Shown here piece after piece: positions 40,158 through 54,801 of a stretch of 64,000 bases of DNA (positions are counted from its first letter, which is position 1; every line of letters starts with the position of its first letter). A program made the position numbers and the translations under genes. The notes under the pieces are model-generated. The model was not told the DNA's origin. It did not search any database and was given only the letters and a program-made list of their open reading frames with translations. The stretch is taken from positions 186,001-250,000 of IMG/VR virus record IMGVR_UViG_3300034073_003340; one strand, given 5' to 3'.

Positions 40158-40167
40158 AATCTCGCCG

Positions 40168-40527: not shown

Positions 40528-40583
40528 TTCCGATCTCCTTGTTTGCTGTCTATGTCCTGGTTTTAACAGAAACTGGTTAGGTG

Positions 40584-41036
40584 TCAACCAGTTTTCTTCT
40601 TTCCGTTGATCACCAGCTGCGCGGGACCCTCATAGCCGAAAAGAAATGCCGGAACCTTGCTGCCGCGCGGCGCATCATACTGGTCACCAAATTCAAAGGT
40701 CTTGTCGCCGACTTTTCCCGTCATCGAATACCAGGTGTTGGCATAATAGTTGAAGCCCACGCCGCTTTCCGCAATGAGCTTTGCGTAAACTTCCGAAAAT
40801 TCACCTTCATAGTGATGAGAGGTGGTGCCGCTGCGAGCCCGATCGGCTTTCAGCGTAACCGGCATGATGGAGCCGGTATAACGACCCTTTGTAATTTCGA
40901 CGAAGATCGGCTTTCCAGCAGCCAGCGTTTCGTTGATGTGATCGAAGATCTCCTTGTAGGCATCCCAAAAGGAACCAAAGGTAGTGTAACGACCATCCAG
41001 CTTGGGAAGTTCCAACCTCTTTACTATCTGTGCCAT
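40584..41036 (-). CDS. Hypothetical early protein (paralogous to N-terminus of 42592)
   Basis: IFVEITKGRYTGSI...FLFGYEGP; stop codon lies in the next -35 box. Confidence 0.75.
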   Translation of the reverse strand: MAQIVKRLELPKLDGRYTTFGSFWDAYKEIFDHINETLAAGKPIFVEITKGRYTGSIMPVTLKADRARSGTTSHHYEGEFSEVYAKLIAESGVGFNYYANTWYSMTGKVGDKTFEFGDQYDAPRGSKVPAFLFGYEGPAQLVINGKKKTG

Positions 41037-41120
41037 TTCCGACCTCCTTGTTTGCTTCCGATAAACCAGTTCTAGCAGAACTGGTGAGATAGTCAACCAC
41101 TATCTCACCAGTTCGCTGGA

Positions 41121-41558
41121 TTAAGCGACCTTTTCCGCGCGAGCAGCCTGAATTACTTCAAAGCGCACAAACTCGTCCTTGGTATCCTCAGGACCCAGTT
41201 CGTCCTTGATATAGCCACCGAACGTGCCGACCAGGCTGTCGACGATTTCCCGACAATCACCCCAGTGGCCCAGCGAGATGTAGGTCATGTCATCGGTGGT
41301 AACGTGTTCATAATCACACTTACAGGAGCCATCGACATGAACCGACATGAGGCGGCGTGTTGCCTTCTTGTTGCGCTCCCAGGGACGCATCGCCAGCAGT
41401 TCAGGAGTATAGTTTTCAGTGAACGAGATCTGGTAGAAGCTGTCGATGCTGGTGAAGAGGATTGCGAAGTTGTCGCCACCATATTTCTTCTTGATCAGCT
41501 TGACGAGATCGATGGGGTTGATGTTGACGCCGATCAGACCAACGTAAGAAACGCTCAT
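41121..41558 (-). CDS. Hypothetical early protein
   Basis: Cassette promoter 41614 and RBS. Confidence 0.8.
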   Translation of the reverse strand: MSVSYVGLIGVNINPIDLVKLIKKKYGGDNFAILFTSIDSFYQISFTENYTPELLAMRPWERNKKATRRLMSVHVDGSCKCDYEHVTTDDMTYISLGHWGDCREIVDSLVGTFGGYIKDELGPEDTKDEFVRFEVIQAARAEKVA

Positions 41559-41624
41559 ATTCGATCTCCTGTGTTGCTTGCTATAAACTGGTGATAGCAT
41601 CTCACCAGTTTATGTCAACCAGTT

Positions 41625-41912
41625 TTAGGAGAATTCACATTCAGGAAGATCTGCGGGGTCCATACCATCTTCAACATCGACCTGTCGACACCAGCGTTCC
41701 CAGCCGGATAGGTTGAAATTGATGGTATAGCCACCCCAGGGTTCTGAACTAATCTTGACCCAGCCCTTGTCCTCGGCATCGAGCCAACCTTTGCCCACAG
41801 GACCCTCGAGAGACTTGATCTCATGCTTGGGAGTGTTGCCCAGCTTACGAATCAATGCCTTTGTGCTGGGCTTGAGCAGGGCAAACTCGGGGGCCTCGAC
41901 GGCCTTAGTCAT
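41625..41912 (-). CDS. Hypothetical protein
   Basis: About 95 aa; start uncertain. Confidence 0.65.
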   Translation of the reverse strand: MTKAVEAPEFALLKPSTKALIRKLGNTPKHEIKSLEGPVGKGWLDAEDKGWVKISSEPWGGYTINFNLSGWERWCRQVDVEDGMDPADLPECEFS

Positions 41913-42075
41913 CGAGGTCGATCCGCTTGTTTTCTGCTCGGCGCTTGCGAGCACTGTTGGCGCGGTAGCTCTTGTCCTTGCGGTAATCGCCCAGATCCAT
42001 ACCGCCCTTTTTCTTGCTGCGGCCCAGCTTCTCGAGAATCTCGATAAACCATGAGGTTCGAATTTTACCTGCCAT
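41905..42075 (-). CDS. Small basic protein
   Basis: AAGGAG SD before MAGKIR. Confidence 0.6.
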   Translation of the reverse strand: MAGKIRTSWFIEILEKLGRSKKKGGMDLGDYRKDKSYRANSARKRRAENKRIDLDD

Positions 42076-42085
42076 TTCTATCTCC

Positions 42086-42274
42086 TTAGCCTCGAGGCAT
42101 TCTTCGATCACCCTGGAGACAGGCAATACGATGACGCAGACTGTTGCGCTCCGTCTCGTCTGTTTCGGTTTCCAGTTCAGCCTGGAGCCGATCAATATTG
42201 GCCTGAATGCGGACCCGATCAGCCTCGGAGGCCGGCTTCTGTGTGTAATAGCACTTCAACTGAATATCGCGCAT
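42086..42274 (-). CDS. Small coiled-coil protein
   Basis: Cassette promoter 42317. Confidence 0.65.
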   Translation of the reverse strand: MRDIQLKCYYTQKPASEADRVRIQANIDRLQAELETETDETERNSLRHRIACLQGDRRMPRG

Positions 42275-42317
42275 TTCAATCTCCTTGTTAAGAACCCTAC
42301 ACTCTGGTGAACAGATG

Positions 42318-42515
42318 TCAACCAGTTTTGGGACGGAGTTTTGCGGACAGCTTGTTAGCTAGCCGAATCAGAGCAATCGAACGATCCTTGGGCGTATCGG
42401 GATCGTCAGCGAGATACCAGATCGCATCGATCTGCTCTTCTGCCGTCCTGGCTTTGATAGCGGCCAGTGGCACAATCGCGAGAGCCGGAATGTTCAGAAT
42501 AAACGGCTTTGCCAT
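42318..42515 (-). CDS. Hypothetical early protein
   Basis: Cassette promoter 42573; ends KTG* in the next -35. Confidence 0.7.
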   Translation of the reverse strand: MAKPFILNIPALAIVPLAAIKARTAEEQIDAIWYLADDPDTPKDRSIALIRLANKLSAKLRPKTG

Positions 42516-42591
42516 CTTTTGATCTCCTCGATTGCCTACCTACTCACCAGTTCTATACTCTGGTGAGTAGGAGTCAACCAGTTTTTGGAGA

Positions 42592-43404
42592 TTAATTGCT
42601 CAGTTTGAAAAGCATCAGTCGATCACCCAGATCCTTGCTATACTTGAGCAGACAGGTTACATTCTCGCCATTTTTGACCTGTCTGCGGACCATCTCTGTA
42701 GAGATGCGACCTGATCCGCCTCCTATGAATGCGGTATAGGCTAGCGATCCCTGTTCGGTAACTTTGATAAGTTTGCCGATCAGCAGTGTATTGGCCCCGC
42801 CATAAAGAAACAGATCGCCCAACTGTATCTCATCACCCAACTGATCGAAAACCTTGTGTTGGGCAGGATCTCGCATTGCTGCCAGTTCTTCTGGTGTTCG
42901 TTCTGTTCGGGAATAGCAATAGACGGTAGGACCCTGATAATCAAACAAAAACTCCAGGCTCATATGCTCGTCATAACTCAATGAAACCGATTTGCGACCA
43001 TCAAATTTTGCCTGGTATCTCGCATTCCAGGCAATGTTGGTAGTGAAGTCATAAGGAATTTGAAAATTCAGCTTCTTGCCTGTTGGCCGATCATTTACAA
43101 GCTTTGCTGTGACAAATTTGTTGATCGGCCAACAGGCAAGATAACCAGGATCCTGCCAGGCTGAAGTATTGGAGATTTTCCACTGGTTGACATCTACTCT
43201 TACGATAGAACCGGCTCGGCATCCGTCGTGAATTTTCGCAAAAATTTCTCCTCGATTTTTGAGGAGTTCAAGCAATTGCTTGAACTCAAGTTCACGATCT
43301 CGGATGAAATCTCGATATTGGCTAATCTCTTTGACTGTTTGATTTTTGCCAACTGATATGCTGGCCAGCATACCCTGAAACAGATCTCGGATCATCAAGC
43401 TCAT
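42592..43404 (-). CDS. Two-domain hypothetical protein
   Basis: IFAKIHDGCRAGSI...FLFDYQGP; VFDQLGDEIQLGD second domain; ends MLFKLSN. Confidence 0.8.
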   Translation of the reverse strand: MSLMIRDLFQGMLASISVGKNQTVKEISQYRDFIRDRELEFKQLLELLKNRGEIFAKIHDGCRAGSIVRVDVNQWKISNTSAWQDPGYLACWPINKFVTAKLVNDRPTGKKLNFQIPYDFTTNIAWNARYQAKFDGRKSVSLSYDEHMSLEFLFDYQGPTVYCYSRTERTPEELAAMRDPAQHKVFDQLGDEIQLGDLFLYGGANTLLIGKLIKVTEQGSLAYTAFIGGGSGRISTEMVRRQVKNGENVTCLLKYSKDLGDRLMLFKLSN

Positions 43405-43467
43405 ATTCGATCTCCACAAAACAGAAGGCCACACCTATAGCAGATGTGGCCTTCCGTCAATTGACTT

Positions 43468-44151
43468 TTAATACCAGCTATCGTCATCCGACTTTTCGCC
43501 ACCCTCATACCAGAGGTTTTCCCGGATATATTCCAGGCATTCCATCAGGGTGCCGCGCTTTTCCAGACCGCTGCTAACAAAACGGGTTTCAAAAACCACA
43601 GCCGAACCGTCGTCGAGGACGCCCAGGTTGTAGCTGCCATGTTCCGACAGGTTGTGCTCGAAAATGTCAAACAGCTTGAGTGTCTGAACGTTGATCTTTT
43701 CCTCCTTGTGGGAAAAGCTGCCGATCATGAAATCACTGGGGGACATCTGCGTGGCGTCCCAGTTGCCGGTCTTCATGTCGGGAAGGACCTCGAGGATCAG
43801 CTTTTCAAGCTGCTCAAGCTTGGCAGTGTCCCAGGTATAGTTGAGAGCCAGCTTGAGGGTCCGCTGACGCGTTCCGCTCCAGTAGCCGCCTCCAAACTGA
43901 AGACCAGTTCCCTTCCACTTGCCCTTCCAGGTCATGTCGGTGAGGAACTCGTATCCTTCCCGAAACTCAACATGGGTGCCGGGCAGGAAAGTTTCCAGCG
44001 CTCGTGCGACAGTCATGGGCTGCTGCGCGGCTTCGGCCTCCAGCATCTTGACCAGTTGATTGTGAAGGCGATTGACCTTGGCCTGCTGCTTCTCGAGCGC
44101 GGCGATTTCGATCTTGAGAATTTCCTCAACCTGTTCGCGGGTCTTGGTCAT
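43468..44151 (-). CDS. Hypothetical early protein
   Basis: 227 aa, cassette promoter 44206. Confidence 0.85.
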   Translation of the reverse strand: MTKTREQVEEILKIEIAALEKQQAKVNRLHNQLVKMLEAEAAQQPMTVARALETFLPGTHVEFREGYEFLTDMTWKGKWKGTGLQFGGGYWSGTRQRTLKLALNYTWDTAKLEQLEKLILEVLPDMKTGNWDATQMSPSDFMIGSFSHKEEKINVQTLKLFDIFEHNLSEHGSYNLGVLDDGSAVVFETRFVSSGLEKRGTLMECLEYIRENLWYEGGEKSDDDSWY

Positions 44152-44217
44152 TTGTAAATCTCCTTTTGTCTGCCTATAACCCGTGATAGCAGAAACTGGT
44201 GAGGAGTCAACCAGTTT

Positions 44218-44589
44218 CTAGATACCAGAGAAGTTTTCAGCCTGCTCGATGTTGACGACCACCTCTTCCAGCCATTGCTCGATGGTCGTTGGTTCGATCT
44301 CATCAAACGACTCACCAAAGGGTCCATAAACCGACGCACCAGCCTTGAGCGACCAAAGAGACTGATCGTCATCTTTGATGAAGAGGTAAATGGTGTGACC
44401 CTCTTCATAGTCCACCCAAGCGGTTTCACCGATCAACGTCCAACCAATTAGAGCCTCTGCTCCATAATCCTCTTCGAGACGCTCAATTGCCTGCTGACGC
44501 CAGAAAGGTGACATAAAGCCACCTACCTGTCTAGCGTCATCCCACTGCTCTCGCAGGATCTGTTCAGCTTCCTGTGGAGTGAACATCAA
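44218..44589 (-). CDS. Hypothetical protein
   Basis: 123 aa, acidic. Confidence 0.75.
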   Translation of the reverse strand: MMFTPQEAEQILREQWDDARQVGGFMSPFWRQQAIERLEEDYGAEALIGWTLIGETAWVDYEEGHTIYLFIKDDDQSLWSLKAGASVYGPFGESFDEIEPTTIEQWLEEVVVNIEQAENFSGI

Positions 44590-44936
44590 GCCACCACCGT
44601 GTCGAGCCAGCGTAGGGTGCGAAAATACTGCTCACACCATTCCTTCTGCGCAACCTTGAGCTCCTCGGTGACCATCACGAGAATCTTGTATTCCTGGAGA
44701 GCTTTGACCCAGGTACGCGGGATACGCTTGCCCCGAGTATAGCGATCCTGGATCTTCCGGATCAAGTCGCGTCCTGCCGTCGCCTGAGCACGAAATTCCT
44801 GGCTGTCTTTGCCGTTGTCGACCACAAGCCGATCGCCTTCGATCTTGTAATGCGGATAAGCGGAGACCATGAAAAAGGGCATACCTGCCTGATTCAGCAT
44901 ATAACCCACATACTGACCTTCAAACTTTTCCATCAT
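44586..44936 (-). CDS. Hypothetical early protein
   Basis: Cassette promoter 44990. Confidence 0.75.
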   Translation of the reverse strand: MMEKFEGQYVGYMLNQAGMPFFMVSAYPHYKIEGDRLVVDNGKDSQEFRAQATAGRDLIRKIQDRYTRGKRIPRTWVKALQEYKILVMVTEELKVAQKEWCEQYFRTLRWLDTVVA

Positions 44937-45002
44937 CTGTCTCCTTTGTTTGCTTCCTACTCACCTGTTCTAGCAAAACAGGTGAGGAAGTCAACCAGAA
45001 TT

Positions 45003-45344
45003 TCAGGAAATTTTCTTGGCCAACCAGGGAGAAATGCGACGGCCAGTCTTGCCAACTGGCAGGATACCACCCCATTCAATTTTGCCAAACGAATCGATGG
45101 TGCGGGGATCGCTACCATACCACATACCACGCAGACCCACTCGGCTTTTCTGTCGACTCACAGTCTGCATGGGGCAGGACTTGTGATCGATTTCACTGAT
45201 AATGACCAGCATACCAGTTCGACCAGTTCGACCAGGCCTAAAAAGGCGTCCAATACGTGCGACGCCATGGATAGCAAGCTTTTGAGCCCTTGCGGCCTGC
45301 TGACGTTCAGCTCGCTTTGCTGACTTTTCCAAATCAATTTTCAT
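45003..45344 (-). CDS. Basic hypothetical protein
   Basis: Cassette promoter 45390. Confidence 0.7.
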   Translation of the reverse strand: MKIDLEKSAKRAERQQAARAQKLAIHGVARIGRLFRPGRTGRTGMLVIISEIDHKSCPMQTVSRQKSRVGLRGMWYGSDPRTIDSFGKIEWGGILPVGKTGRRISPWLAKKIS

Positions 45345-45398
45345 ACGATTCTCCTTTCTATATCTGGTGATAACAGAAATCAGGAGAGTGTCAACCTT

Positions 45399-45863
45399 TT
45401 ACCAAAACCGACGTTTGTCGTAAAAACGAACAGGGTCAGATATTTTGATACTTTCTCGAGTCTCTCCATTTTTGAGCTCTTCAAAGCATTCACAAACATA
45501 GGTAGCTGGTCGTGGATCAGGCAAAATCGGATGCTTTACCTTGGTCATGCCGTTTTGCCGATACTCAGAGCGATGGCTATTGTTATACCGATCTCGCCAA
45601 GTCCCGTCAGGCATCTCATACATAAGAGCAGCACAAAGATATCGACCTCTGGCGTCTGTTCCCACACAATTAAAGCAGGTTTCACATAGCGATCGTCGTA
45701 CAGGCCCTCGATAGACCGGCTGGTACTGATTACAACTAGCGCACCAAAGAAATTCTTCTCTGGGAAAGTGGTTACTCACAGGGCTATTACAGACTTTACA
45801 ACAAGCCTTTGGCGACTCACTTGTGTCGTTTCGCGAGGGCGCAGGAAGGTTACTTGATACCAT
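45399..45863 (-). CDS. Cys-rich (Zn-binding) protein
   Basis: Multiple CxxC pairs. Confidence 0.65.
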   Translation of the reverse strand: MVSSNLPAPSRNDTSESPKACCKVCNSPVSNHFPREEFLWCASCNQYQPVYRGPVRRSLCETCFNCVGTDARGRYLCAALMYEMPDGTWRDRYNNSHRSEYRQNGMTKVKHPILPDPRPATYVCECFEELKNGETRESIKISDPVRFYDKRRFW

Positions 45864-45916
45864 GTTATTAGCCCTCTGCTGTCACCTTCGCCGACGCCTG
45901 AGTCTACCCCCGATCA

Positions 45917-46195
45917 TCAGTCGTTGAATACCATGACCTGTGGACCACCCAGTGCCCGACCAAAATTGTCGACCTGACGGAACATCCAAGCCTGAATTTC
46001 GCCGGGCTCATTGCGATCTTCTGCCCGCTTGACATCAAAAAGGCAATACTGCCGAGTCTCGCGCTTGCCAACGATCTTGAACGTTTCATAGCGGAGCAGG
46101 CGATCGAAATCGATCTTTGCCGACAGACAGGAAGCCTCGGTGCTGAGAACCTGAGTTACCTTGTTCCAGGTAAAGTCGTCGATTGAAACCTGCAT
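45917..46195 (-). CDS. Hypothetical early protein
   Basis: Variant cassette promoter 46247. Confidence 0.7.
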   Translation of the reverse strand: MQVSIDDFTWNKVTQVLSTEASCLSAKIDFDRLLRYETFKIVGKRETRQYCLFDVKRAEDRNEPGEIQAWMFRQVDNFGRALGGPQVMVFND

Positions 46196-46247
46196 GATAA
46201 CTCCTGTTTCTGCCTATACACCAGCTCTAACAGAAACAGGTGATATG

Positions 46248-46619
46248 TCAACTAGTTTTAGGAGAATTCAGGTGATTGAGGATATCCTCAATGCTGACTT
46301 TGCCAATAGATCTTGGCGTGATAACAGTCGGCTGATCAGCTGATTTTTCAATCCAAGCTTCGCGACCATCGGCAGTCTCGAGGTTATCTCCAAGATCGCG
46401 ACAGTTTTTCTCGGCCTCAACTTGCCATTCTGCCACTTGTTCCAGGGTAAAAGAGTCCATATAACGCTGCGATGACTCCGAGACTCCAGGACAGTTGATC
46501 TTGCCGTCTTTGACCTGGATCCTGAACATTACCCCTTCGAGTCGACGATCGCCAAATGAATAACCATCGAGCAAAGCTTCTTCAACCGGACCGTCTTCGG
46601 TCATGATATTGATCGTCAT
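46248..46619 (-). CDS. Hypothetical protein
   Basis: Ends KTS* in the next -35. Confidence 0.75.
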   Translation of the reverse strand: MTINIMTEDGPVEEALLDGYSFGDRRLEGVMFRIQVKDGKINCPGVSESSQRYMDSFTLEQVAEWQVEAEKNCRDLGDNLETADGREAWIEKSADQPTVITPRSIGKVSIEDILNHLNSPKTS

Positions 46620-47119
46620 CCTACAACTCCAAAACTGATAGAGCGTTTTCTACTAAGAGCATGTATGCCTGATGCGGTCAAGCAATAATTGGCTCCAGTG
46701 AACTTCATATAACCCCGATCAGCTAGGCTTTTACAGATAAAACGTTCAGGGTCATTGGACGGAATAAAGGAGTTCTGTGTGGCTGATTTCTTCTTTAGAA
46801 GGCCAAGGGTGAGTTCACAAATCTCTTGTTCCAGCTTGGTAAGAGGTAATCTCCTAGACTTCCTTTTCGAGGAGGTCTTTGGACGGTCGTCGATGACCTT
46901 GAATATTTTACTACCAGCTTGTTGATTTTGTGATCTGCACCACTCGATCATTTGGGTTTTGGTATGACAACCATGCCCAATTATTGGCGACCATTTGCCG
47001 TTAATGAGACGCCCGATGCTTGGACTCAAGGTCTGCGATGAGGTCGAGTCCTTCGAGCAGCCAAACGAGGGTGAGCTCTTCATCTCCCCGATGGGCATAC
47101 TGGTGCTCATAAAATACAT
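46616..47119 (-). CDS. Hypothetical protein, possibly winged-helix C-terminus
   Basis: CKSLADRGYM...YCLTASGI; true start probably downstream. Confidence 0.55.
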   Translation of the reverse strand: MYFMSTSMPIGEMKSSPSFGCSKDSTSSQTLSPSIGRLINGKWSPIIGHGCHTKTQMIEWCRSQNQQAGSKIFKVIDDRPKTSSKRKSRRLPLTKLEQEICELTLGLLKKKSATQNSFIPSNDPERFICKSLADRGYMKFTGANYCLTASGIHALSRKRSISFGVVG

Positions 47120-47694: not shown

Positions 47695-47742
47695 CTGCCT
47701 ATATTCTGGTGATAACATGGATAACCAGAATGTCAATCAGAT

Positions 47743-47925: not shown

Positions 47926-48434
47926 TGGGTCTCTCCCAGGGTCTGATCGATCTTAGCTAGTCGGTTCTTCAGGGACTCATAATCAGCCCTTGTGGGCCGC
48001 CACTGGGTATCCGCGAGCTTACGACTGGCCAGATACGCACCGTCAGCGGCGAGAATCTGAGCATCAACTGTTTTGTGCTTGGTGATTAGCTTGACGATCA
48101 GTTCACGCAATTGCGCAATGGTGCGCAACTTGATGGCTTTGCCCAGCCAGGCTTTGGCCTTGGTCTCAGCGGCTTCCCAGTCGGCAATTTCAGCGTCCAG
48201 CTGCTCATCAAAAGGCAGTTGGGTCGGGAAACCGTCAACTGTCTTGCTGACGTAGAATGGTTCAGTGTGGTGCCGGGTTGCGATAACCTTGACCGCGCCC
48301 TTTGATGCTCGATCAAGCTGCTCAGCCACCTCGCTGTTGGCCGACCTCACATAGTGATTCAAATGACCCAGCCAGGAAATGTCTGAGGGGTTGAACGCGT
48401 CATGTGAGATACTCACTATGGTATGATACCCCAT
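47922..48434 (-). CDS. Hypothetical protein
   Basis: Start moved to MGYHTIVS. Confidence 0.7.
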   Translation of the reverse strand: MGYHTIVSISHDAFNPSDISWLGHLNHYVRSANSEVAEQLDRASKGAVKVIATRHHTEPFYVSKTVDGFPTQLPFDEQLDAEIADWEAAETKAKAWLGKAIKLRTIAQLRELIVKLITKHKTVDAQILAADGAYLASRKLADTQWRPTRADYESLKNRLAKIDQTLGETQ

Positions 48435-48590
48435 GGAATCAAAATCCTCCATCCATAAAGCTGTCAACAAGATCAGCTTCCAGTATAAAGTACAGGGTGT
48501 CTGTATCGATGCCAAACTTCTCGCAGGTCTTGGCTTCTGCTTCATCATCGTCGCAGAGTGAGAGATAAAACTTGACGATTTCTTCTTCCA

Positions 48591-48827
48591 TTAGAAGTCC
48601 TCCAAGTCCGAGGGTTTCAGGACGATTTCCAGGGCCTGGTGACCTACCATACTATCCCTGAATTCGACGATGAGATTTTCCTTGTCATCGTCCATGTAGA
48701 TTGAGCAGGGATAGCGACTCCAGCCGACCCTTGCCTTGAGATCCAAAGTGGCCCAGGCAGCGTCACCGGCCTTCTTTTCGAGGGCCGCATACTGGTCGAT
48801 CAGATCACTTACTGCCGAGATATCCAT
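48591..48827 (-). CDS. Hypothetical early protein
   Basis: Cassette promoter 48877. Confidence 0.7.
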   Translation of the reverse strand: MDISAVSDLIDQYAALEKKAGDAAWATLDLKARVGWSRYPCSIYMDDDKENLIVEFRDSMVGHQALEIVLKPSDLEDF

Positions 48828-48893
48828 GAAGTTCTCTCCTTGCTTACTCACCAACTTTAGCACGAGCTAGCTGAATGTCAACCAAATTGACAA

Positions 48894-49397
48894 TCAGTCA
48901 TACCACTCCATGCGACGCTTGTGTGACTTCTCGAGGCTGAAATCATGATTGCGATTGGCGAATGTTGCGAGGTCGAGTCGATGCGTCTTGCTGCCGAACT
49001 GGGGCTTGATGGTCACGGTCTTGTCCGTGATGCGCTCGATGGCCCCCAGGTAGTCGAAGTTGAAGGAGTCGTAGATCGCAGTATCACCCTCGGTGAACTT
49101 GATATCAACGTCCTTGTAATTGCCATACCGACCGGTCAGGTGGATAGTGGTCTTGCCCTCGTCGTTCTTACCTATGCGGTAGAACATGCCGGTAGGCTCA
49201 CCGCCGTAGGTGTGACCGCGCTGGACCCGAGTCTTGCTCAAAATGGGCAGAGGGGCTTCATAACCCACAAAGTCCTTGATCAGCGCGAGGGCGTTGTCGA
49301 ACTGGTTGGAGTCAGGGTGGAGACGGATGCCGCCGTCCATATTGAACTCGATCTTCTCGAGAACCTGGATTGCTTGTTCGATCGTGAGAATCTGCAT
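48894..49397 (-). CDS. Conserved-type phage hypothetical protein
   Basis: GDTAIYDSFN..Y.G.I..IT.KTV.I...RLDL..F..RN; promoter 49449. Confidence 0.8.
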   Translation of the reverse strand: MQILTIEQAIQVLEKIEFNMDGGIRLHPDSNQFDNALALIKDFVGYEAPLPILSKTRVQRGHTYGGEPTGMFYRIGKNDEGKTTIHLTGRYGNYKDVDIKFTEGDTAIYDSFNFDYLGAIERITDKTVTIKPQFGSKTHRLDLATFANRNHDFSLEKSHKRRMEWYD

Positions 49398-49449
49398 AAC
49401 GTCTCCTGTTTCTGCCTATACACCAGTTCTAGCAGAAACTGGAGAAGTG

Positions 49450-49623
49450 TCAACCAGATTTTTGACGCCAGGCGAGTTCTCGACCAAATGCCAAACCCGC
49501 GTATGCGCTGGCAACAATGATTCCAAGACCACCGGGAATAATACCTATGTAGACCATCAAGGTAATGATGGCGACGCCGATCAACGCCAACTTATAACTG
49601 AAAATAACGTGATCTATGGCCAT
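49450..49623 (-). CDS. Small two-TM membrane protein (57 aa, not in ORF track)
   Basis: MAIDHVIFSYKLALIGVAIITLMVYIGIIPGGLGIIVASAYAGLAFGRELAWRQKSG*; stop in the next -35. Confidence 0.6.
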   Translation of the reverse strand: MAIDHVIFSYKLALIGVAIITLMVYIGIIPGGLGIIVASAYAGLAFGRELAWRQKSG

Positions 49624-49630
49624 CGCACCA

Positions 49631-49936
49631 TCACTCCATGTCGTCTTCGTATTTCTTTAGCATTTCGGTATACCGGTCAACAGTTGATTGATCGCCGTCT
49701 TTCTGAGCTCTGGCAAGAGAGCCCTTGATCTTATCAACCATGGCCGGATAGGAAAAAACCGTTATAACCGATCCATGTTCCTTGGCATGGAAACGACCCT
49801 TGCCATAGGTGACATCAAAGGATTTCTGGACCATATCAACCGTAAGGGCCCCTCCTCCTCCAGTTATCGTGTGATTGGTATGGTCGGAGTTACCGATGCC
49901 GGCGAGCCAGTTGTCTTCGCGTTTCCAGAGTCCCAT
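49631..49936 (-). CDS. Hypothetical protein
   Basis: 101 aa. Confidence 0.7.
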   Translation of the reverse strand: MGLWKREDNWLAGIGNSDHTNHTITGGGGALTVDMVQKSFDVTYGKGRFHAKEHGSVITVFSYPAMVDKIKGSLARAQKDGDQSTVDRYTEMLKKYEDDME

Positions 49937-49946
49937 ATGAACCTCC

Positions 49947-50384
49947 TTAGCGACGCTTGCCGCCGAGGAAGCTCTTCAGCTCGCTCATGAATACTGCGGG
50001 CGCAGCCGAAGGGTCCTTTTCGAGGGCTTCCTTGACCTTGCGTCCAAAATGGTCTGCCTCGGCCTGGATCCCATCCAGATACATCTTGCGCTCGAATGCC
50101 TTGGTTTCCTCGCTCATTGCTTCAGCGGGAATGGGCTTGTTGCCGACCGTCACATAGCGAGTGCGCTTGCCGTGCGGGACGATCTTCAGGAAACCAAAAT
50201 ACGCTGCCGCTTCGATCCGGCGGACCGCGTTGGGATTGCCAGTGCCGCTGGTGCCCCAGATTGCCGTGGTGGCTTCGGTCATGGTGATCTGGGTCTTGCC
50301 GCGAATAGCCATGTAGTTTTCAACACTAGCAGCGATTTCAGCTGCCTTCTGTGCTGCTTCCGACATTTCGTTCCAGTTTGCCAT
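49947..50384 (-). CDS. Winged-helix-like DNA-binding protein
   Basis: ITMTEATTAIWG...AVRRIEAAAYFGFLKIV..GKRTRYV; promoter 50441. Confidence 0.6.
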   Translation of the reverse strand: MANWNEMSEAAQKAAEIAASVENYMAIRGKTQITMTEATTAIWGTSGTGNPNAVRRIEAAAYFGFLKIVPHGKRTRYVTVGNKPIPAEAMSEETKAFERKMYLDGIQAEADHFGRKVKEALEKDPSAAPAVFMSELKSFLGGKRR

Positions 50385-50441
50385 GTTTCGATCTCCTGTC
50401 TGTGTGCCTATGTTCTGGTTCTACACTCTGGTGAGGAGAAG

Positions 50442-50891
50442 TCAACCAGAAATCTGCGTAATGAGGTCCTCGAGCGAGATACGCTCGACCATTACCGCAT
50501 GTTCTTTGTGGTAGAGAACCTGTGCTTCGCCCTTGCGGACTTTGTGGTGAGGGACTTTGTAGATGACCAGCGACATGCTGTCCTTGTGATGCTTTGCGAG
50601 TTTATTCATTTTCGCAATGCCTTCAGCGGGAAACCACTTCTCTAGCTGTTCCAGAGATTCAAAAGCGCAAAGCCAGTTGCGACGATCGCCGCTGGGCCAC
50701 TTCCGCATTTCCTTGACGGTGAGATGAAAGCCACCCCAAAAATGTTGAAGCTTGGGATCATACTCAGGGCTAGGATGGTATTCTTTCAGAACAGCCTGGT
50801 CTTCAGCCAATGCTTGACGCGAGCATTTGGTTCCAAATCCGCGAGAATAGCAACCCTCACCTTCTTCGTTCTCTAGCCGGTATATGAGCAT
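50442..50891 (-). CDS. Conserved-type phage hypothetical protein
   Basis: IYRLE...G.G.Y...HPSP..D...AFESLEQLEKWF. Confidence 0.75.
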   Translation of the reverse strand: MLIYRLENEEGEGCYSRGFGTKCSRQALAEDQAVLKEYHPSPEYDPKLQHFWGGFHLTVKEMRKWPSGDRRNWLCAFESLEQLEKWFPAEGIAKMNKLAKHHKDSMSLVIYKVPHHKVRKGEAQVLYHKEHAVMVERISLEDLITQISG

Positions 50892-50955
50892 GACTGTCTC
50901 CCTGGTTACCAATTCTGCTACTTTGTAGCAGAATTGGTAGAGGAATCAACCAGTT

Positions 50956-51240
50956 TTATGACCGGTGGATCATCTTGGTGAGAGCAATTGCCTCATCCAG
51001 GGTCTTGACCGAGCCAGGTTCCCAGCCCTCGATGTTACCACTGGTAAGGACCAGCTGGTCCTTACCAGTGAAGTTGATGCGAACGACAGGAGCAGTCCAC
51101 TCATAAATTTCGACCTGGCGAGCATCACCGGCCTGCTCGAAAAATGAGCGAATCATAAACCTCAGAGCAGCCGGAACAGTCTTGAACAACCGGTCGGAAG
51201 GATTGCCGTAAGGGCTAGTCGGGATAGCGATAATCAACAT
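50956..51240 (-). CDS. Hypothetical early protein
   Basis: Cassette promoter 51296. Confidence 0.7.
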   Translation of the reverse strand: MLIIAIPTSPYGNPSDRLFKTVPAALRFMIRSFFEQAGDARQVEIYEWTAPVVRINFTGKDQLVLTSGNIEGWEPGSVKTLDEAIALTKMIHRS

Positions 51241-51308
51241 GGGTTCGATCTCCTGTGTCTGCCTACTCACCTGTTTTAACAGAAACAGGTGAGTAGTCAA
51301 CCAGAAAA

Positions 51309-51647
51309 TCAGTTTACCGTGCTGAAAGCTGCCCGCTGGCTACCGAGTTCATTTTCCATGAAACGGATGATATGACGGGTCGCCGTTTCAAACTGGTGCT
51401 GATTGGCATATGGGCCCATCACAACAGTGATATCAAAGCGATCTTTCTGAACGTCGTTCCGCTCGACCGAACTGCCCTGGACCTTGTCACCAAAGCGTTC
51501 ACGTGTTAGTTCTTCAATCGCTTGCCGAACTTGCTCTTCAGAGCCTTCGGGGATATTCCCCACCATCATCATGATCTGGTCTTCGTGACCTGAAAGAAAG
51601 AACACCGGGGCATTTTTGTCTTTCATTTCCAGATAGCCGCGATTCAT
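51309..51647 (-). CDS. Hypothetical early protein
   Basis: Cassette promoter 51698. Confidence 0.75.
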   Translation of the reverse strand: MNRGYLEMKDKNAPVFFLSGHEDQIMMMVGNIPEGSEEQVRQAIEELTRERFGDKVQGSSVERNDVQKDRFDITVVMGPYANQHQFETATRHIIRFMENELGSQRAAFSTVN

Positions 51648-51714
51648 ATAACCTCCTTTTGTTGTTGTTTTTCGAATCTACAATAATTGGTGAATATGTC
51701 AACCAGTTTATTGA

Positions 51715-52110
51715 TTACACCACTTCGCAACGACCAGAAAGTTCAAGGCCGCGTATCGCGTCTGCCGGAATCAAACCCTGCTCAGCTGCCGCTTCGAGAA
51801 TGATGCGATCCATGATCGGCTCGATCACCCGATGAATGCCATCCCAGTTGGTCGTGAGAAAACGACCGCGGCCCGTTCGAAAAGCGCCAACGCTGATGTT
51901 GAAGATTCTGCGAATCAGAGGACCACGGTTACCACCGCCGTTGTTGAAGATGTCGTAGTAGGCGTTGGATGCCTGGCGGAACTTCTCGAGCTTGCGATTG
52001 CGCCCACGCGGTGATTCAACCGCGCCTTCAAACGGGATCATGAGCTGAAGTTGATCAGAAAGACCCTGGTGAGCGCCGGTGTTACCCCAATAAGTCTTCA
52101 TCTTTTCCAT
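51715..52110 (-). CDS. Conserved-type phage hypothetical protein
   Basis: TYW...G..Q...D.L...IP..G...R...N.YYD.FNNG; promoter 52164. Confidence 0.8.
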   Translation of the reverse strand: MEKMKTYWGNTGAHQGLSDQLQLMIPFEGAVESPRGRNRKLEKFRQASNAYYDIFNNGGGNRGPLIRRIFNISVGAFRTGRGRFLTTNWDGIHRVIEPIMDRIILEAAAEQGLIPADAIRGLELSGRCEVV

Positions 52111-52174
52111 GTTCGATCCCCTTTGTCTGCTTATTCACCAGTTCTAGCAGAACTGGTGAATTCGTCAACCATTT

Positions 52175-52510
52175 TTACCAGAGATGCCGGTCTGAACCGG
52201 CTGATATTGATTTAGCGTTCCATGCCATTCTACGACCTGATTCAGCAATATATTGGGTTTCAAACCCCTCTCCGGGAGAGGTTCCACCGGCCTCTATGTA
52301 ATTAAGGTGAAACGAGCCCAGGCTTTGACAGGCAACCGAGGTATCATATTTGAGAGAATGGTCTCGAACATCAAGTAGACAGGAGGTAGCTGCGGATTCA
52401 AAGGCGCGAGCAGCGTCTTTCAGTTCTATTGAATCTTGAATCGTGATAGCAAAGTAACCACCGGCGATTGAGCATACCAACATTCCTAAAACAATTGTAA
52501 GTTTTCTCAT
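52175..52510 (-). CDS. Membrane-anchored periplasmic protein
   Basis: N-terminal hydrophobic segment; promoter 52568. Confidence 0.7.
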   Translation of the reverse strand: MRKLTIVLGMLVCSIAGGYFAITIQDSIELKDAARAFESAATSCLLDVRDHSLKYDTSVACQSLGSFHLNYIEAGGTSPGEGFETQYIAESGRRMAWNAKSISAGSDRHLW

Positions 52511-52579
52511 TTTTGGTCTCCTGGCGGTATCTGCTTATTCACCAGTTCTAGCAGAAATAGGAGACCTGTCAACCAGCTT

Positions 52580-52801
52580 TTAATCCCGACGACGATCAAT
52601 CACACCGTCAACCATCTTGGTAGCATAATGGACAGGACGCTCGTAGATACCCTGCTCGTCCCTGTAGACGCTGATGAACCTACCCTGGCTAGCCAGAGAC
52701 ACCGTCTCACCATAGCTGATGTTGACGCCCAGGGGCCAATGGGCAACAAGGTCCTCGGCTTCCAAGGCATCGTTAAGTGTAGGAAAGCGGTTGTTCTTCA
52801 T
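52580..52801 (-). CDS. Conserved-type phage hypothetical protein
   Basis: MKNNRFPTLNDALEAE...ISVYRDE.G.YERPVHY. Confidence 0.75.
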   Translation of the reverse strand: MKNNRFPTLNDALEAEDLVAHWPLGVNISYGETVSLASQGRFISVYRDEQGIYERPVHYATKMVDGVIDRRRD

Positions 52802-52802
52802 G

Positions 52803-52973
52803 TCAGTATCCCGTGTTGACGCCAGCGCGAAAGCCCGCCTGATAGGCACGTTCTAGAGCCTCCTTAACGTCCCAGACGCTGAGCTCCTTGAAGTCTAGAC
52901 TGTCGCTGTTGCGTGTCTCGAGAGTCTCCAGATCCAAAACGTCCTGGGCGATTTCATTGAGTTCCTCGTCCAT
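52803..52973 (-). CDS. DUF6900-like small protein (56 aa, not in ORF track)
   Basis: LETLETRNSDSLDF..LSVW.VKEALERAYQAG. Confidence 0.75.
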   Translation of the reverse strand: MDEELNEIAQDVLDLETLETRNSDSLDFKELSVWDVKEALERAYQAGFRAGVNTGY

Positions 52974-53203
52974 TAGTAGGGCACCTTGTCACAATTTGCG
53001 AGGGGAGCGCAAAAGGGTTCTCCGTCGTCGCCGAGACCATAAACGATTCCGTCCACTACGGCTTCGACCACCACCGTCTCGACCAGACCTCGAGCATATT
53101 CCATGAGGATCATGTCGCCCTCGTTGATGTCGGAAGGGTTGACTGCCGGGGCAACAGATCCAAAACCCAGCTTTGCCAAAATACGCTCCACAAAGTTCTT
53201 CAT
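52973..53203 (-). CDS. Hypothetical early protein
   Basis: Cassette promoter 53256. Confidence 0.7.
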   Translation of the reverse strand: MKNFVERILAKLGFGSVAPAVNPSDINEGDMILMEYARGLVETVVVEAVVDGIVYGLGDDGEPFCAPLANCDKVPY

Positions 53204-53266
53204 CTGCTATCTCCTCGTCTGCCTATAAACTGGTGATAGCACCATAGACCAAAGAGTCAACCAGTT

Positions 53267-54382
53267 TTACACCAGTTCGAAAACTTCTCCGGTTTCCAGG
53301 TCTTCACACATGATGATGAACTTGTCGACGATTTCCTCGGCAACCTTGGTCACGGCAGCTTCAACAATTGCGTCCACCTCGTCATCGCTTACAAAAGCGC
53401 CATGGACCCTGCGAACCGTTGAACCATTGCTGACCAGCATATCACCCCAGCCCAGCAGGTTCTGCGCACCGCCCTGACCCAGTGCCGTGCGGCTGTCGAT
53501 CTCGCTGCTGACGCGGAAGCAAATACGCGCAGGGAAGTTGGACTTGATAACACCGGTTACAACGTCCACAGAGGGCCGCTGAGTAGCCATAACAACATGG
53601 ATGCCCGCTGCCCGAGCCTTTTGCGCAAGGCGCTGTACGAGCCCTTCCAGTGTTTTTCCACCAGTCTGCATGAGATCAGCAAACTCGTCAATGAAGACCA
53701 CAATATAGGGCAATTCGTTTCCGGCTTCCTTGTAGGCCTTGATATTGCGAACGCGGGCGTCAGCGAGCAGTCGGTAACGCCGCTCCATTTCCTCAACCAT
53801 ATCCTCGAGGGCACGGATGGATTCACGCGGGTCGGTGATAACCGGCTGGACCAAATGAGGAATGCCATTGTAGATGGACAGTTCCAACATCTTTGGGTCG
53901 ATCATGAGGAACTTACATTCATCAGCTGACAAAGCTGCCATGAGGCTGATGATCATCGCGTTGATACCAACGCTTTTGCCTGAGCCAGTTGTGCCACTGA
54001 CCAATACGTGGGGCATGGTTGCGAGGTCGGTGACGACCACTTCACCCATAACGTCCAGCCCGAGAGCAATGGGCAAAGCCGCAGTGGTGGTCTTGAACTC
54101 CTCGCTGGTCAGAACCTCGTTGAGGAGTATGGTCTTGCGCTGCTCATTGGGAATTTCAACAGCCAGTGTGGGGCTACCAGGCATCACGTTGATCTGGATG
54201 CTCGCAACACCAAGCAGGCGCGCCACGTCCTCGTTGAGCTTCATGATCTGCGAAGCACGAGTTCCAGCGGGAATTTCGATTTCGTAAACGCTGACCAGAG
54301 GTCCTTGCTTGGAACCAATAACACGAACACGATGTCCGAATTCGTCCAGGGCGCGTTCCAGTGCGGTAGCAAAGTTACTCAA
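53267..54382 (-). CDS. ftsK: FtsK/SpoIIIE motor domain only (no TM, no gamma)
   Basis: PHVLVSGTTGSGKS, MIDPKMLELSIY, IDEFADLM, AQKARAAGIH..ATQRPSVDV.TG.IK.N, GAQNLLG.GDML; TTG start. Confidence 0.9.
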   Translation of the reverse strand: MSNFATALERALDEFGHRVRVIGSKQGPLVSVYEIEIPAGTRASQIMKLNEDVARLLGVASIQINVMPGSPTLAVEIPNEQRKTILLNEVLTSEEFKTTTAALPIALGLDVMGEVVVTDLATMPHVLVSGTTGSGKSVGINAMIISLMAALSADECKFLMIDPKMLELSIYNGIPHLVQPVITDPRESIRALEDMVEEMERRYRLLADARVRNIKAYKEAGNELPYIVVFIDEFADLMQTGGKTLEGLVQRLAQKARAAGIHVVMATQRPSVDVVTGVIKSNFPARICFRVSSEIDSRTALGQGGAQNLLGWGDMLVSNGSTVRRVHGAFVSDDEVDAIVEAAVTKVAEEIVDKFIIMCEDLETGEVFELV

Positions 54383-54440
54383 AACCGATCTCCTCTTGAT
54401 GTCTCATCATAGCAGGACAGGTGTGACTGTCAACCAGTTT

Positions 54441-54731
54441 TTAATCGTCCCAATGAGCAACGCCCAAGATCAGACCGCGATAACAGGCAAAACCCTTGAC
54501 TGGCTTGCCACGCAAGATTGCGGTGTATTTGTAAATTTCAGATTTGCGACACTGGAGAGGGGCTTGATTGATGAAAGCCTTGCCGATTGAGATGCTGCGG
54601 TAGCCCTTGTCCTTGAGCGTGTCCTCGACCTTTGATTTTCCATATATGTAATCAACTACGCCGGCCTGTGCCGGGGTTGAAAGAATGCTCATAGCCAGGG
54701 TAAAAGCCAACACCATCTTCCGCATTTTCAA
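54441..54731 (-). CDS. Secreted small protein (Sec signal peptide)
   Basis: MRKMVLAFTLAMSILSTPAQA-; promoter 54772. Confidence 0.7.
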   Translation of the reverse strand: MKMRKMVLAFTLAMSILSTPAQAGVVDYIYGKSKVEDTLKDKGYRSISIGKAFINQAPLQCRKSEIYKYTAILRGKPVKGFACYRGLILGVAHWDD

Positions 54732-54801
54732 CTCCTCTTGTTATCACCACAATAACAATTCTGGTGAACCCGTCAACCAGAATTGTTATAAGGAAGCTTC
54801 C

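What the first reader, a model, noticed from the sequence alone, without database searches (positions are those of the whole stretch)
40584..54441. ORF stops abut or lie inside the next cassette's -35 box
Seen: four ORFs use the TGA of TTGAC as their stop (KTG* at 40584 and 42318, KTS* at 46248, KSG* at 49450). Many others end 0-10 nt before AACTGG (38253, 41625, 44218, 50956, 53267, 54441), with no terminator. Inference: a fixed junction, as expected if ORFs are inserted or exchanged by recombination at the AACTGG-TTGA edge, comparable to integron cassettes whose stops sit in the attC inverse core.
Basis: partly seen in the sequence, partly recalled or inferred. Interest (0 to 1): 0.6.

Follow-up and report, generated by a model that had tools for sequence, protein, structure and literature searches.

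The report
Early promoter cassettes abutting gene stops
A 436-kb T4-like giant phage carries about 50 near-identical promoter/stem-loop/ribosome-site cassettes between its small early genes, packed so tightly that upstream stop codons touch or sit inside the promoter's -35 box; this kind of cassette (PeSL) is already described in smaller T4-like phages.

Summary
On the minus strand, 36 cassettes in the window (46 in the 47-kb array, 211 across five related phages) share one layout. It runs A-rich tract, CTGG-TTGAC (-35), a fixed 16-nt spacer, TG(C/T)TAnAAC (-10), a conserved leader, GGAGAT and a start codon.

Upstream stops pile up at the cassette's 5' edge. In the own array 10 of 46 use the TGA of TTGAC and 20 of 46 start 6-12 nt before it. 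Across five genomes the mode sits exactly where TAA abuts AACTGG.

The T of the stop follows the reading frame, while the A-tract persists where the ORF ends far upstream. The stop is therefore squeezed into the promoter's A-tract, not part of the repeat.

The phage has T4-type capsid and portal genes. The cassettes match PeSLs, including a covarying hairpin with the -10 in its loop.

The integron analogy fails. There is no integrase or resolvase, and every ORF has its own promoter.

Exchange at the cassettes is plausible. A RecA/UvsX-like gene is present, cassette pairs reach 88% identity, and 8 of 11 variable blocks are cassette-bounded. It is not proven, because no close relative was available.

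Verdict: a new member of a known kind, of moderate interest.

The parts
29196..63823 (-). The part of the early-gene cassette array that lies in the window. It holds 36 cassettes. The array continues beyond the window to about 76.4 kb in window numbering (genome 215-262 kb).
63752..63823 (-). Cassette (A-tract to start codon). The upstream stop is 43 nt before TTGAC, behind terminator 63830-63850.
61094..61165 (-). Cassette; upstream stop at -29.
59387..59464 (-). Cassette. The upstream stop is the TGA of TTGAC (59452-59454). This junction is conserved in all five genomes.
58322..58394 (-). Cassette. The upstream stop is at -17, and a non-stop TAA still stands at -9.
57668..57739 (-). Weaker cassette with an 18-nt spacer; upstream stop at -28.
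57183..57273 (-). Cassette. The upstream stop is at -61, behind terminator 57296-57321.
55099..55169 (-). Cassette. The upstream stop TGA is at -7 and overlaps the A/T positions before CTGG.
54723..54785 (-). Cassette; upstream stop at -28.
54380..54442 (-). Cassette in front of the FtsK-like gene; upstream stop TAA at -10 (54441).
53201..53269 (-). Cassette; upstream stop TAA at -9 (53267), abutting AACTGG.
52508..52581 (-). Cassette; upstream stop at -10.
52108..52177 (-). Cassette; upstream stop at -9. A 13-bp hairpin has the -10 in its loop.
51645..51711 (-). Cassette; upstream stop at -15.
51238..51309 (-). Cassette; upstream stop at -11. Its 14-bp hairpin uses CACCTG/CAGGTG arms, a compensatory variant.
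50889..50958 (-). Cassette with TTGAT as -35; upstream stop TAA at -9 (50956).
50382..50454 (-). Cassette.
49395..49462 (-). Cassette. The upstream stop is the TGA of TTGAC (49450-49452, KSG*).
48825..48890 (-). Cassette; upstream stop at -15.
47677..47745 (-). Cassette; upstream stop TGA at -9.
46193..46260 (-). Cassette. The upstream stop is the TGA of TTGAC (46248-46250, KTS*).
45342..45403 (-). Cassette; upstream stop at -7.
44934..45003 (-). Cassette; upstream stop at -11. The hairpin uses CACCTG/CAGGTG arms.
44149..44219 (-). Cassette; upstream stop TAG at -10 (44218). The hairpin has the -35 in its loop.
42513..42586 (-). Cassette; upstream stop at -17. A 12-bp hairpin lies over the -10.
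42272..42330 (-). Cassette. The upstream stop is the TGA of TTGAC (42318-42320, KTG*).
41556..41627 (-). Cassette; upstream stop TAA at -9 (41625).
41034..41105 (-). Cassette; upstream stop at -27. The extra DNA is an upstream hairpin arm that pairs with the spacer. The cassette is 88% identical to the one at 40091-40162.
40525..40596 (-). Cassette. The upstream stop is the TGA of TTGAC (40584-40586, KTG*).
40091..40162 (-). Cassette; upstream stop at -17.
39639..39724 (-). Cassette with no ORF behind it; upstream stop at -6.
38601..38671 (-). Cassette. The nearest upstream stop is at -9, but the frame it closes is only 42 codons.
38192..38256 (-). Cassette; upstream stop TAA at -8 (38253), overlapping AACTGG by 1 nt.
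37740..37803 (-). Cassette; upstream stop at -7.
32687..32757 (-). Cassette; upstream stop at -8. It is 87% identical to the cassette at 40091-40162.
29615..29704 (-). Cassette; upstream stop at -32, with an upstream AACTGGTGA arm.
29196..29266 (-). Cassette; upstream stop at -49.
40584..41036 (-). 150-aa ORF ending KTG* on the -35 TGA.
42318..42515 (-). 65-aa ORF ending KTG* on the -35 TGA.
46248..46619 (-). 123-aa ORF ending KTS* on the -35 TGA. Its G003 orthologue ends NSG* in the same way.
49450..49623 (-). 57-aa ORF ending KSG* on the -35 TGA.
50442..50891 (-). 149-aa ORF of the Phage_T4_Y00F family ending ISG* on the -35 TGA.
59452..59955 (-). 167-aa ORF ending on the -35 TGA. The orthologues in all four relatives end the same way.
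39465..39492 (-). Intrinsic terminator (12-bp stem followed by a T-run).
57296..57321 (-). GC-rich terminator hairpin between a stop codon and the next cassette.
63830..63850 (-). GC-rich terminator hairpin followed by a T-run, between a stop codon and the next cassette.

Best explanation
The region is the early, hyperplastic gene region of a 436-kb T4-like jumbo phage. Almost every small ORF, or short run of ORFs, is preceded by the same expression cassette of about 70 nt.

The cassette runs as follows: an A/T-rich tract, an extended -35 (CTGG-TTGAC), a fixed 16-nt spacer, an extended -10 (TG(C/T)TAnAAC), a conserved leader, a GGAGAT Shine-Dalgarno site and a start codon. It usually also carries a stem-loop, whose arms covary and which most often holds the -10 in its loop. 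These are lineage-specific PeSL-type cassettes (promoter-early stem-loop), read by the host's primary-sigma RNA polymerase.

The stops touch the cassette because the genome is compacted against the promoter's 5' edge. In one reading frame the TGA inside TTGAC serves as a backstop stop codon. In the other two frames CTGGTTGAC offers no stop, so the ORF ends in the A-rich positions just before CTGG (TAA-AACTGG).

Shown here: the anatomy, the stop distribution and its dependence on frame, the hairpin covariation, the T4-like identity of the phage, and the conservation of the cassettes in four related giant phages.

Inferred: promoter activity and early timing. Also inferred is that the cassettes, being 50-70-nt islands of homology between unrelated ORFs, serve as crossover points for the phage's RecA/UvsX-type homologous recombination and so help genes to be gained, lost and moved as promoter-plus-ORF units.
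For: Motif and strand bias.

Position matrix: CTGG-TTGAC is near invariant, the spacer is 16 nt in 210 of 224 cassettes, and T and A open the -10 in all of them.

The -10 ends in C in 71% of the own cassettes. At least 7 of 8 positions match the Caulobacter RpoD consensus GCtANAWC in 22 of 49 (consensus from PMC8144410).

Stop tables.

Frame dependence of the stop's T, and persistence of the A-tract.

Cassette junctions have a median stop-to-start gap of 63 nt (interquartile range 56-76). In 64-68% of them no free nucleotide lies before the A-tract.

Hairpin: arms of the same cassette pair better than arms taken from different cassettes (mean helix 6.41 against 5.34 bp; 9 bp or more in 19% against 4%; 0 of 300 permutations reach the observed mean). 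Where the stop lies farther upstream, the extra DNA is a further hairpin arm.

T4-like identity: Gp23 at E = 2e-81 and the T4 portal at E = 1e-101.

The PeSL definition matches point by point.

For the recombination part: a RecA/UvsX-like gene is present. Cassette pairs reach 88% identity over 68 nt, against a mean of 46%. 8 of 11 variable blocks are cassette-bounded. Translocated genes keep their cassette. The 3' half of a cassette stays more similar to that of its orthologue than background when the upstream neighbour differs (0.47 against 0.37, p = 7e-6), while the 5' half barely does (0.38 against 0.33, p = 0.04).
Against: No transcript data exist, since no RNA run holds the sequence. Promoter activity, early timing and the role of the hairpin are therefore untested.

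The hairpins lack a U-tract, so the terminator function shown for RB49 PeSLs may not apply.

The recombination part is weak. Synteny breaks are not significantly enriched at cassette junctions (odds ratio 1.6, p = 0.086 over non-independent pairs; own versus G003 odds ratio 0.68). Three of 11 variable blocks have one edge that is not at a cassette. Many junctions are ancient. Any indel that leaves genes intact must end in an intergenic spacer, and here the spacers are the cassettes.

The joints seen in laid contigs have 20-32-nt sides and come from related phages in the same sample.
Confidence: 0.75

Rival explanations
1. The cassettes are promoters and nothing more. Gene flux in the region arises from illegitimate recombination at random places, filtered by selection for intact genes, so that surviving break points fall in the only intergenic DNA there is. 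The stop geometry is pure compaction.
For: The stops depend on reading frame and the A-tract persists without them. Synteny breaks show no significant enrichment at cassette junctions. Junctions are conserved in distant orthologues. Several variable blocks have one edge that is not at a cassette.
Against: Cassettes offer 50-70 nt of homology, up to 88% identical, to a phage with a RecA/UvsX-like recombinase. PeSL-mediated exchange and mini-circles have been shown in other T4-like phages. The two halves of a cassette differ in how well they track the orthologue.
Confidence: 0.35
2. Integron-like site-specific cassette exchange, in which a recombinase cuts at the AACTGG/TTGA edge and inserts or excises ORFs.
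For: There is a repeated element with an inverted repeat at every ORF boundary, and some stops lie inside it.
Against: The whole 436-kb genome holds no tyrosine recombinase and no resolvase or invertase, although the positive controls matched. The 190-aa HTH protein at 55527-56099 has no recombinase domain. The repeat lies 5' of each ORF and carries a -35, a -10 and a Shine-Dalgarno site. The junction position varies with reading frame.
Confidence: 0.03
3. The inverted repeats (CACCAG...CTGGTG and AACTGG) are operators for a phage or host DNA-binding regulator that switches all the early promoters together, in the manner of stoperators.
For: Half-site-like repeats flank the -35 and the -10 in one orientation. 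An HTH protein is encoded within the array at 55527-56099.
Against: The two arms change together in compensatory fashion (CACCTG/CAGGTG, CTCTGG/CCAGAG, GGACTGG/CCAGTCC). Their register and position also shift between cassettes. This fits base pairing better than a fixed protein site. Only CTGG next to TTGAC is invariant.
Confidence: 0.08
4. Translation-coupled attenuation. The stop is held within about 25 nt of the hairpin's 5' arm, so that a ribosome terminating on a read-through transcript melts the hairpin. Translation of the upstream ORF would then set read-through, processing or stability for the next gene.
For: The stop-to-cassette distance is narrow in five genomes. A hairpin lies directly downstream in about 40% of cassettes. 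Where the stop is farther away, an extra hairpin or terminator fills the gap.
Against: The hairpins have no U-tract. About 60% of cassettes lack a helix of 7 bp or more. Compaction alone predicts the same distances. There are no transcript data.
Confidence: 0.08

Closest known systems
PeSL (promoter-early stem-loop) cassettes of T4-like phages RB49/phi1, T4/PST and KVP40/nt-1 (Arbiol et al. 2010, PMC2839356; Comeau et al. 2014, PMC4122927)
   Same: The host phage is T4-like. The composite intergenic repeat has the same parts in the same order: the upstream gene's stop in an A/T-rich stretch, a sigma-70-type -35 and -10, a stem-loop in one of several positions relative to the promoter, then a Shine-Dalgarno site and start codon. 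The cassettes are concentrated in a hyperplastic region of small ORFans, and each phage lineage has its own consensus.
   Different: The genome is 436 kb, against 168-248 kb. The -35 is extended by an invariant CTGG. The -10 ends in C (TAnAAC), which fits an alphaproteobacterial-type primary sigma factor. The spacer is rigidly fixed. The stems are not G-run/C-run and lack a U-tract. Terminator activity, exchange between close relatives and mini-circles are shown for the published PeSLs but not here.
Integron gene cassettes (attC sites with an IntI integrase)
   Same: Small ORFs are separated by a repeated element that can form a hairpin, and stop codons sometimes lie inside the repeat.
   Different: There is no integrase. 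The repeat is 5' of the ORF and is itself a promoter with a ribosome-binding site, whereas integron cassettes are promoterless and expressed from one Pc promoter. No attC core sites are present.
Stoperators of cluster A mycobacteriophages
   Same: Many copies of a short motif lie in intergenic spaces, all in one orientation relative to transcription.
   Different: Stoperators are fixed 13-14-bp repressor sites in temperate phages and are not promoters. Here the invariant part is a -35/-10 pair, and the inverted-repeat arms covary.
Conserved boundary or linker sequences between modules of lambdoid phages (from my own knowledge)
   Same: Short conserved sequences at gene borders are proposed as crossover points for exchanging modules.
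   Different: Those are sparse and are not full expression cassettes. Here there are about 50 copies in 47 kb.

Membership tests
PeSL cassettes of T4-like phages | The carrier is a T4-like myovirus. | tested here: met
   Gp23 major capsid protein (PF07068) at E = 2.4e-81 and the T4 portal (PF07230) at E = 9.5e-102 in the same genome. One array gene carries the Phage_T4_Y00F family.
PeSL cassettes of T4-like phages | A repeated intergenic motif holds a sigma-70-type -35 and -10 at promoter spacing. | tested here: met
   TTGAC, a 16-nt spacer after TTGACN in 210 of 224 cassettes, then TG(C/T)TAnAAC. This is met by sequence only; promoter activity was not measured.
PeSL cassettes of T4-like phages | An A/T-rich stretch upstream of the -35 holds the upstream gene's stop codon. 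| tested here: met
   Positions -9 to -5 are 86-94% A or T (A 43-74%). 107 of 211 stops start at -6..-12 and 31 of 211 lie in TTGAC.
PeSL cassettes of T4-like phages | A stem-loop lies in or around the promoter, in several positional classes. | tested here: met
   Classes with the -10 in the loop, the -35 in the loop, the whole promoter in the loop, or the stem upstream of the promoter. Same-cassette arms pair better than arms from different cassettes, with 0 of 300 permutations reaching the observed mean.
PeSL cassettes of T4-like phages | A Shine-Dalgarno site and the start codon of the downstream gene lie at the 3' end. | tested here: met
   GGAGAT followed by ATG, 47-79 nt after TTGAC.
PeSL cassettes of T4-like phages | The cassettes are concentrated in a hyperplastic region of small ORFans. 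| tested here: met
   46 of 72 minus-strand cassettes lie in genome 215-262 kb. Only 4 of 51 called genes there have a Pfam hit. About half the genes lack an orthologue in the closest relative.
PeSL cassettes of T4-like phages | The stem-loop terminates or attenuates transcription. | not testable with these tools
   No RNA data are available. The stems lack a U-tract, so this remains doubtful.
PeSL cassettes of T4-like phages | Indels and replacements between close relatives end in the cassettes, and mini-circles form. | tested here: inconclusive
   Relatives are only 65-78% identical. 8 of 11 variable blocks are cassette-bounded, but the enrichment test is not significant. The contig joints are not informative.
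Integron gene cassettes | An IntI-type tyrosine recombinase is present. | tested here: not met
   PF00589 has no match in the 436-kb genome, although it matched all 14 control genomes. No resolvase was found either.
Integron gene cassettes | ORFs are promoterless, each followed by a 3' attC, and are expressed from one common promoter. | tested here: not met
   Here each unit starts with its own -35, -10 and Shine-Dalgarno site.

The most novel reading that the evidence does not exclude
The narrow distance between stop and cassette is a working device and not just compaction. A ribosome terminating at or just before the -35 on a read-through transcript would unfold the hairpin that holds the -10 in its loop. 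Translation of each early ORF would then decide whether read-through RNA is attenuated, cut or stabilised before the next gene. About 50 early genes would be chained in this way, while the same cassettes serve as crossover points that let a T4-like genome grow to 436 kb.
Probability: 0.08. Interest if true: 0.65.

Novelty: new member of a known kind. Interest (0 to 1): 0.35.

Why it matters
The finding extends PeSL-type regulatory cassettes from T4-like phages of 170-250 kb to a clade of giant T4-like phages of 416-468 kb found in subsurface, soil and wastewater metagenomes. It provides about 200 aligned natural promoter variants with a fixed geometry.

The -10 consensus (TAnAAC) hints that the uncultured host has a Caulobacter-type primary sigma factor.

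If the cassettes do mediate exchange, they would help explain how these phages accumulate hundreds of small accessory genes.

For the scan itself, the lesson is that stops abutting a repeat are explained here by compaction against a promoter edge. They need no special recombination site.

Tried and rejected
Closer relatives for mapping break points at nucleotide level were not found.
- Megablast against the phage collection gave no match.
- A protein-seeded scan of viral contigs gave one relative at 30% identity.
- Exact-protein look-ups gave only identical copies of this phage or of G003.
- The homologue search had its next-best hit at 86% identity on a 1.2-kb contig.
- The metagenome pattern scan returned 120 stretches. 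Only one (L054) was a real family member, and it was distant.
- A second viral-contig pattern scan added two still more distant carriers.
- Comparing all fetched loci with each other found no pair at 85-99% identity that carries indels.

Reads. All runs were Logan contigs and none was RNA. Laying 6,000 bases gave 15 listed joints. Those between places more than about 400 nt apart have both ends in cassette sequence. The cassette-to-cassette joints have short sides (mostly 20-32 nt) and several stand at depths of 100-600, well above the 7-30 of the contigs that match this phage. They therefore reflect contigs of related phages aligning to the shared repeat, not recombinants of this phage.

Statistical tests that stayed inconclusive were the comparison of synteny breaks at cassette and non-cassette junctions and the orthology test on the 5' and 3' halves of the cassette (only 7 conserved-neighbour cases).

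Rfam gave no family in the window.

The E. coli-type promoter scan picks up only a few cassettes, because it demands a T at the last -10 position.

AsiA and RegB were not found, but their controls did not match anything either, so this says nothing.

I considered whether the HTH protein at 55527-56099 could be a small serine recombinase, since it is 190 aa with a C-terminal HTH_7-like motif. I rejected this because no catalytic domain appears in Pfam, PDB or PHROGs.

I tested whether a TAA at -9 is part of the repeat and rejected it. I also tested whether the upstream AACTGG is mainly a hairpin arm. There is only a slight signal when paired with the spacer and none when paired with the arm after the -10.

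No alternative genetic code was used.

Full report
**Where the window lies.** The window is bases 186,001-250,000 of a 435,856-bp IMG/VR virus record with direct terminal repeats. The genome encodes a T4-type major capsid protein (PF07068, E = 2.4e-81) and a T4-type portal (PF07230, E = 9.5e-102). One gene of the array belongs to the Phage_T4_Y00F family. It is therefore a giant T4-like phage. The same sequence turns up in contigs from subsurface, soil and wastewater metagenomes.

**The observation.** AACTGGTTGAC occurs 15 times in the window, always on the minus strand, against 0.55 expected. In the whole genome it occurs 15 times on that strand and never on the other. Allowing mismatches, and requiring a -10, a Shine-Dalgarno site and a start codon, gives 72 minus-strand cassettes. 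Of these, 46 lie in one array at genome 215-262 kb, and 36 are in the window.

A fifth stop on the TGA of TTGAC lies inside its range at 50442-50444, and a sixth at 59452-59454. In the own array 10 of 46 upstream ORFs stop on that TGA, 20 start their stop 6-12 nt before the first T of TTGAC, 5 do so at 13-17 nt and 11 lie farther away.

**Anatomy of the cassette.** The position matrix over 210 cassettes from five genomes shows these features:
- A/T at positions -7 to -5.
- C, T, G, G at -4 to -1 (70-98%).
- TTGAC.
- A 16-nt spacer after TTGACN in 210 of 224 cassettes.
- TG(C/T) followed by TAnAAC.
- A leader close to ATAGGCAGACAAACA.
- GGAGATCGAA and ATG.

The last base of the -10 is C in 71% of the own cassettes and T in 18%. 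This explains why an E. coli-style promoter scan finds few of them. It also fits the Caulobacter RpoD consensus TTGaCgS / GCtANAWC (PMC8144410), with at least 7 of 8 positions matched in 22 of 49 own cassettes. I take this only as a hint about the host.

**The stem-loop.** Most cassettes can fold into a hairpin, in several positional classes. The commonest pairs a spacer arm with an arm just after the -10, which puts the -10 in the loop. The arms differ between cassettes in a compensatory way (CACCAG/CTGGTG, CACCTG/CAGGTG, CTCTGG/CCAGAG, GGACTGG/CCAGTCC).

Arms of the same cassette pair better than arms drawn from different cassettes. The mean longest helix is 6.41 against 5.34 bp, helices of 9 bp or more occur in 19% against 4%, and 0 of 300 permutations reach the observed mean. 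This argues for a nucleic-acid structure and against a fixed protein operator.

The invariant CTGG next to TTGAC is not explained by pairing. I read it as an extension of the -35.

**Why the stops sit where they do.** Across five genomes, 211 cassettes have an upstream open frame of at least 40 codons. The stop distribution is sharply peaked: -9 (43), -8 (23), -10 (15), -7 (14) and the TGA at +1 (31). Only 17 ORFs run on into the promoter.

The T of the stop follows the reading frame. T at -9 is 67% in that frame and 13-22% in the other two. The A-rich positions remain when the ORF ends more than 12 nt upstream. So TAA is not part of the repeat. ORFs end at the first place where a stop can merge with the promoter's A-tract, and in one frame the -35 itself supplies a TGA.

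Of the 211 ORFs, 78 are in the TGA frame, close to the one third expected, and 31 of those run on to the TGA. Cassette junctions have a median stop-to-start gap of 63 nt, and 64-68% have no free base before the A-tract. Where the stop is farther away, the extra DNA is a further hairpin arm or a true terminator.

**Relatives and the recombination idea.** The same cassette occurs in at least four other large IMG/VR contigs (416 kb, 462 kb, 277 kb and 182 kb), each in a one-strand array. These are only 65-78% identical to the window at nucleotide level. The backbone is colinear with G003, but about half the genes differ.

Points in favour of exchange at the cassettes:
- 8 of 11 own-versus-G003 variable blocks in 40.5-54.4 kb begin with a cassette gene and are followed by one.
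- Genes that sit in different neighbourhoods in different genomes keep a cassette in front of them. Examples are the FtsK-like gene and the families of 50384..49947, 40527..40168 and 67152..66790.
- Where the downstream neighbour differs, protein homology runs to the last residue and stops at the stop codon.
- The 3' half of a cassette tracks its orthologue better than the 5' half when the upstream neighbour differs.
- Cassette pairs reach 88% identity over 68 nt.
- The phage has a RecA/UvsX-like gene.

Points against, or neutral:
- Synteny breaks are not significantly enriched at cassette junctions.
- Three variable blocks have one edge that is not at a cassette.
- Several stop-in-TTGAC junctions are conserved across all or most of the genomes, so they are old.
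- Any indel that spares genes must end in intergenic DNA, and here that DNA is the cassette.
- Laid contigs gave only repeat-induced joints from co-occurring relatives.

No genome pair close enough for nucleotide-level mapping could be found.

**Comparison with known systems.** The element matches the published definition of PeSLs in T4-like phages almost clause by clause. That includes the statement that the element begins with the upstream gene's stop in the AT-rich stretch before the -35, and that the stem-loop can sit in five positions relative to the promoter. Lineage-specific consensus sequences are also described for PeSLs.

The differences here are the CTGG extension, the C-ending -10, the rigid spacer, stems without G/C runs or U-tracts, and the genome size.

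The integron analogy fails on the recombinase and on the architecture, since every ORF has its own promoter.

**Verdict.** The boundary is real and coincides with the edges of variable units. Its precise geometry is explained by compaction against a promoter. The mechanism of any exchange would be homologous and PeSL-like, not integron-like, and it remains unproven here. I class it as a new member of a known kind, with interest 0.35.

Noticed in passing
window 27662-28930 (-): A 422-aa ORF carries the class-I Glu/Gln tRNA-synthetase catalytic domain (E = 2e-79) and an anticodon-binding domain. It sits at the downstream end of the cassette array and is conserved at about 76% nucleotide identity in G003. 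An aminoacyl-tRNA synthetase is unusual in a phage.
   Followed up: partly
window 39455-39724 (-): The cassette at 39639-39724 has no ORF behind it. The roughly 220 nt that follow hold two copies of a 4-codon mini-ORF (MNWP*), each behind a Shine-Dalgarno-like site. A strong intrinsic terminator (39465-39492) follows, 37 nt ahead of the M23 peptidase gene (39428..38862). This could be a leader/attenuator or a small RNA. The overall fold is not better than shuffles (z = -0.5).
   Followed up: partly
window 53267-54382 (-): A 371-aa FtsK/SpoIIIE-like ATPase (Pfam E = 2.6e-62; PHROG 'host takeover') has a cassette on both sides. Its orthologue in G002 (62% identity) lies in a different neighbourhood and is again flanked by cassettes.
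   Followed up: partly
all cassettes, e.g. window 40091-40162 (-): The -10 consensus TG(C/T)TAnAAC ends in C rather than T and resembles the Caulobacter RpoD consensus GCtANAWC. This may point to an alphaproteobacterial-type host.
   Followed up: partly
window 59452-59955 (-) and its orthologues in G001-G004: The last residue of this protein family is encoded by the bases just before the next promoter's -35, and the stop is the TGA of TTGAC in all five genomes (FFD*, FFG*, FFS*, FFG*, FYG*). The family of 76772..76362, outside the window, ends L(S/T)G* in three of four genomes.
   Followed up: yes
window 55527-56099 (-): A 190-aa protein inside the array has a C-terminal HTH_23/HTH_7-like motif and a weak resemblance to sigma region 4. 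It has no recombinase domain and may be an early transcription regulator.
   Followed up: partly
window 61183-62787 (-): A 534-aa protein with a cytidylyltransferase-like (nucleotidyltransferase) domain lies in the array and is conserved in four relatives at 55-63% identity.
   Followed up: no
window 10632-20892: This stretch holds structural genes: a T4 gp9/10-like N-terminus with a phage tail repeat, a 1042-aa protein, and three proteins with He_PIG Ig-like domains. GC content is 42-46% here against 48-53% in the cassette array.
   Followed up: no
window 29704-29725, 41105-41120 and 53269-53285 (-), and beyond the window at 65.9 kb: Several cassettes are preceded by a second copy of the arm, in the form AACTGGTGA(G/A)A followed by (A/T)(A/T)CTGGTTGAC. 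The extra copy pairs with the spacer arm. At 41034-41120 this gives a 14-bp helix with the -35 in its loop. These may be scars of slipped recombination or alternative hairpins.
   Followed up: partly
genome 432039-432800 (outside the window): A RecA/UvsX-like ORF of 373 aa (PF00154, E = 8.8e-15). It is the only recombinase family found in the genome.
   Followed up: no
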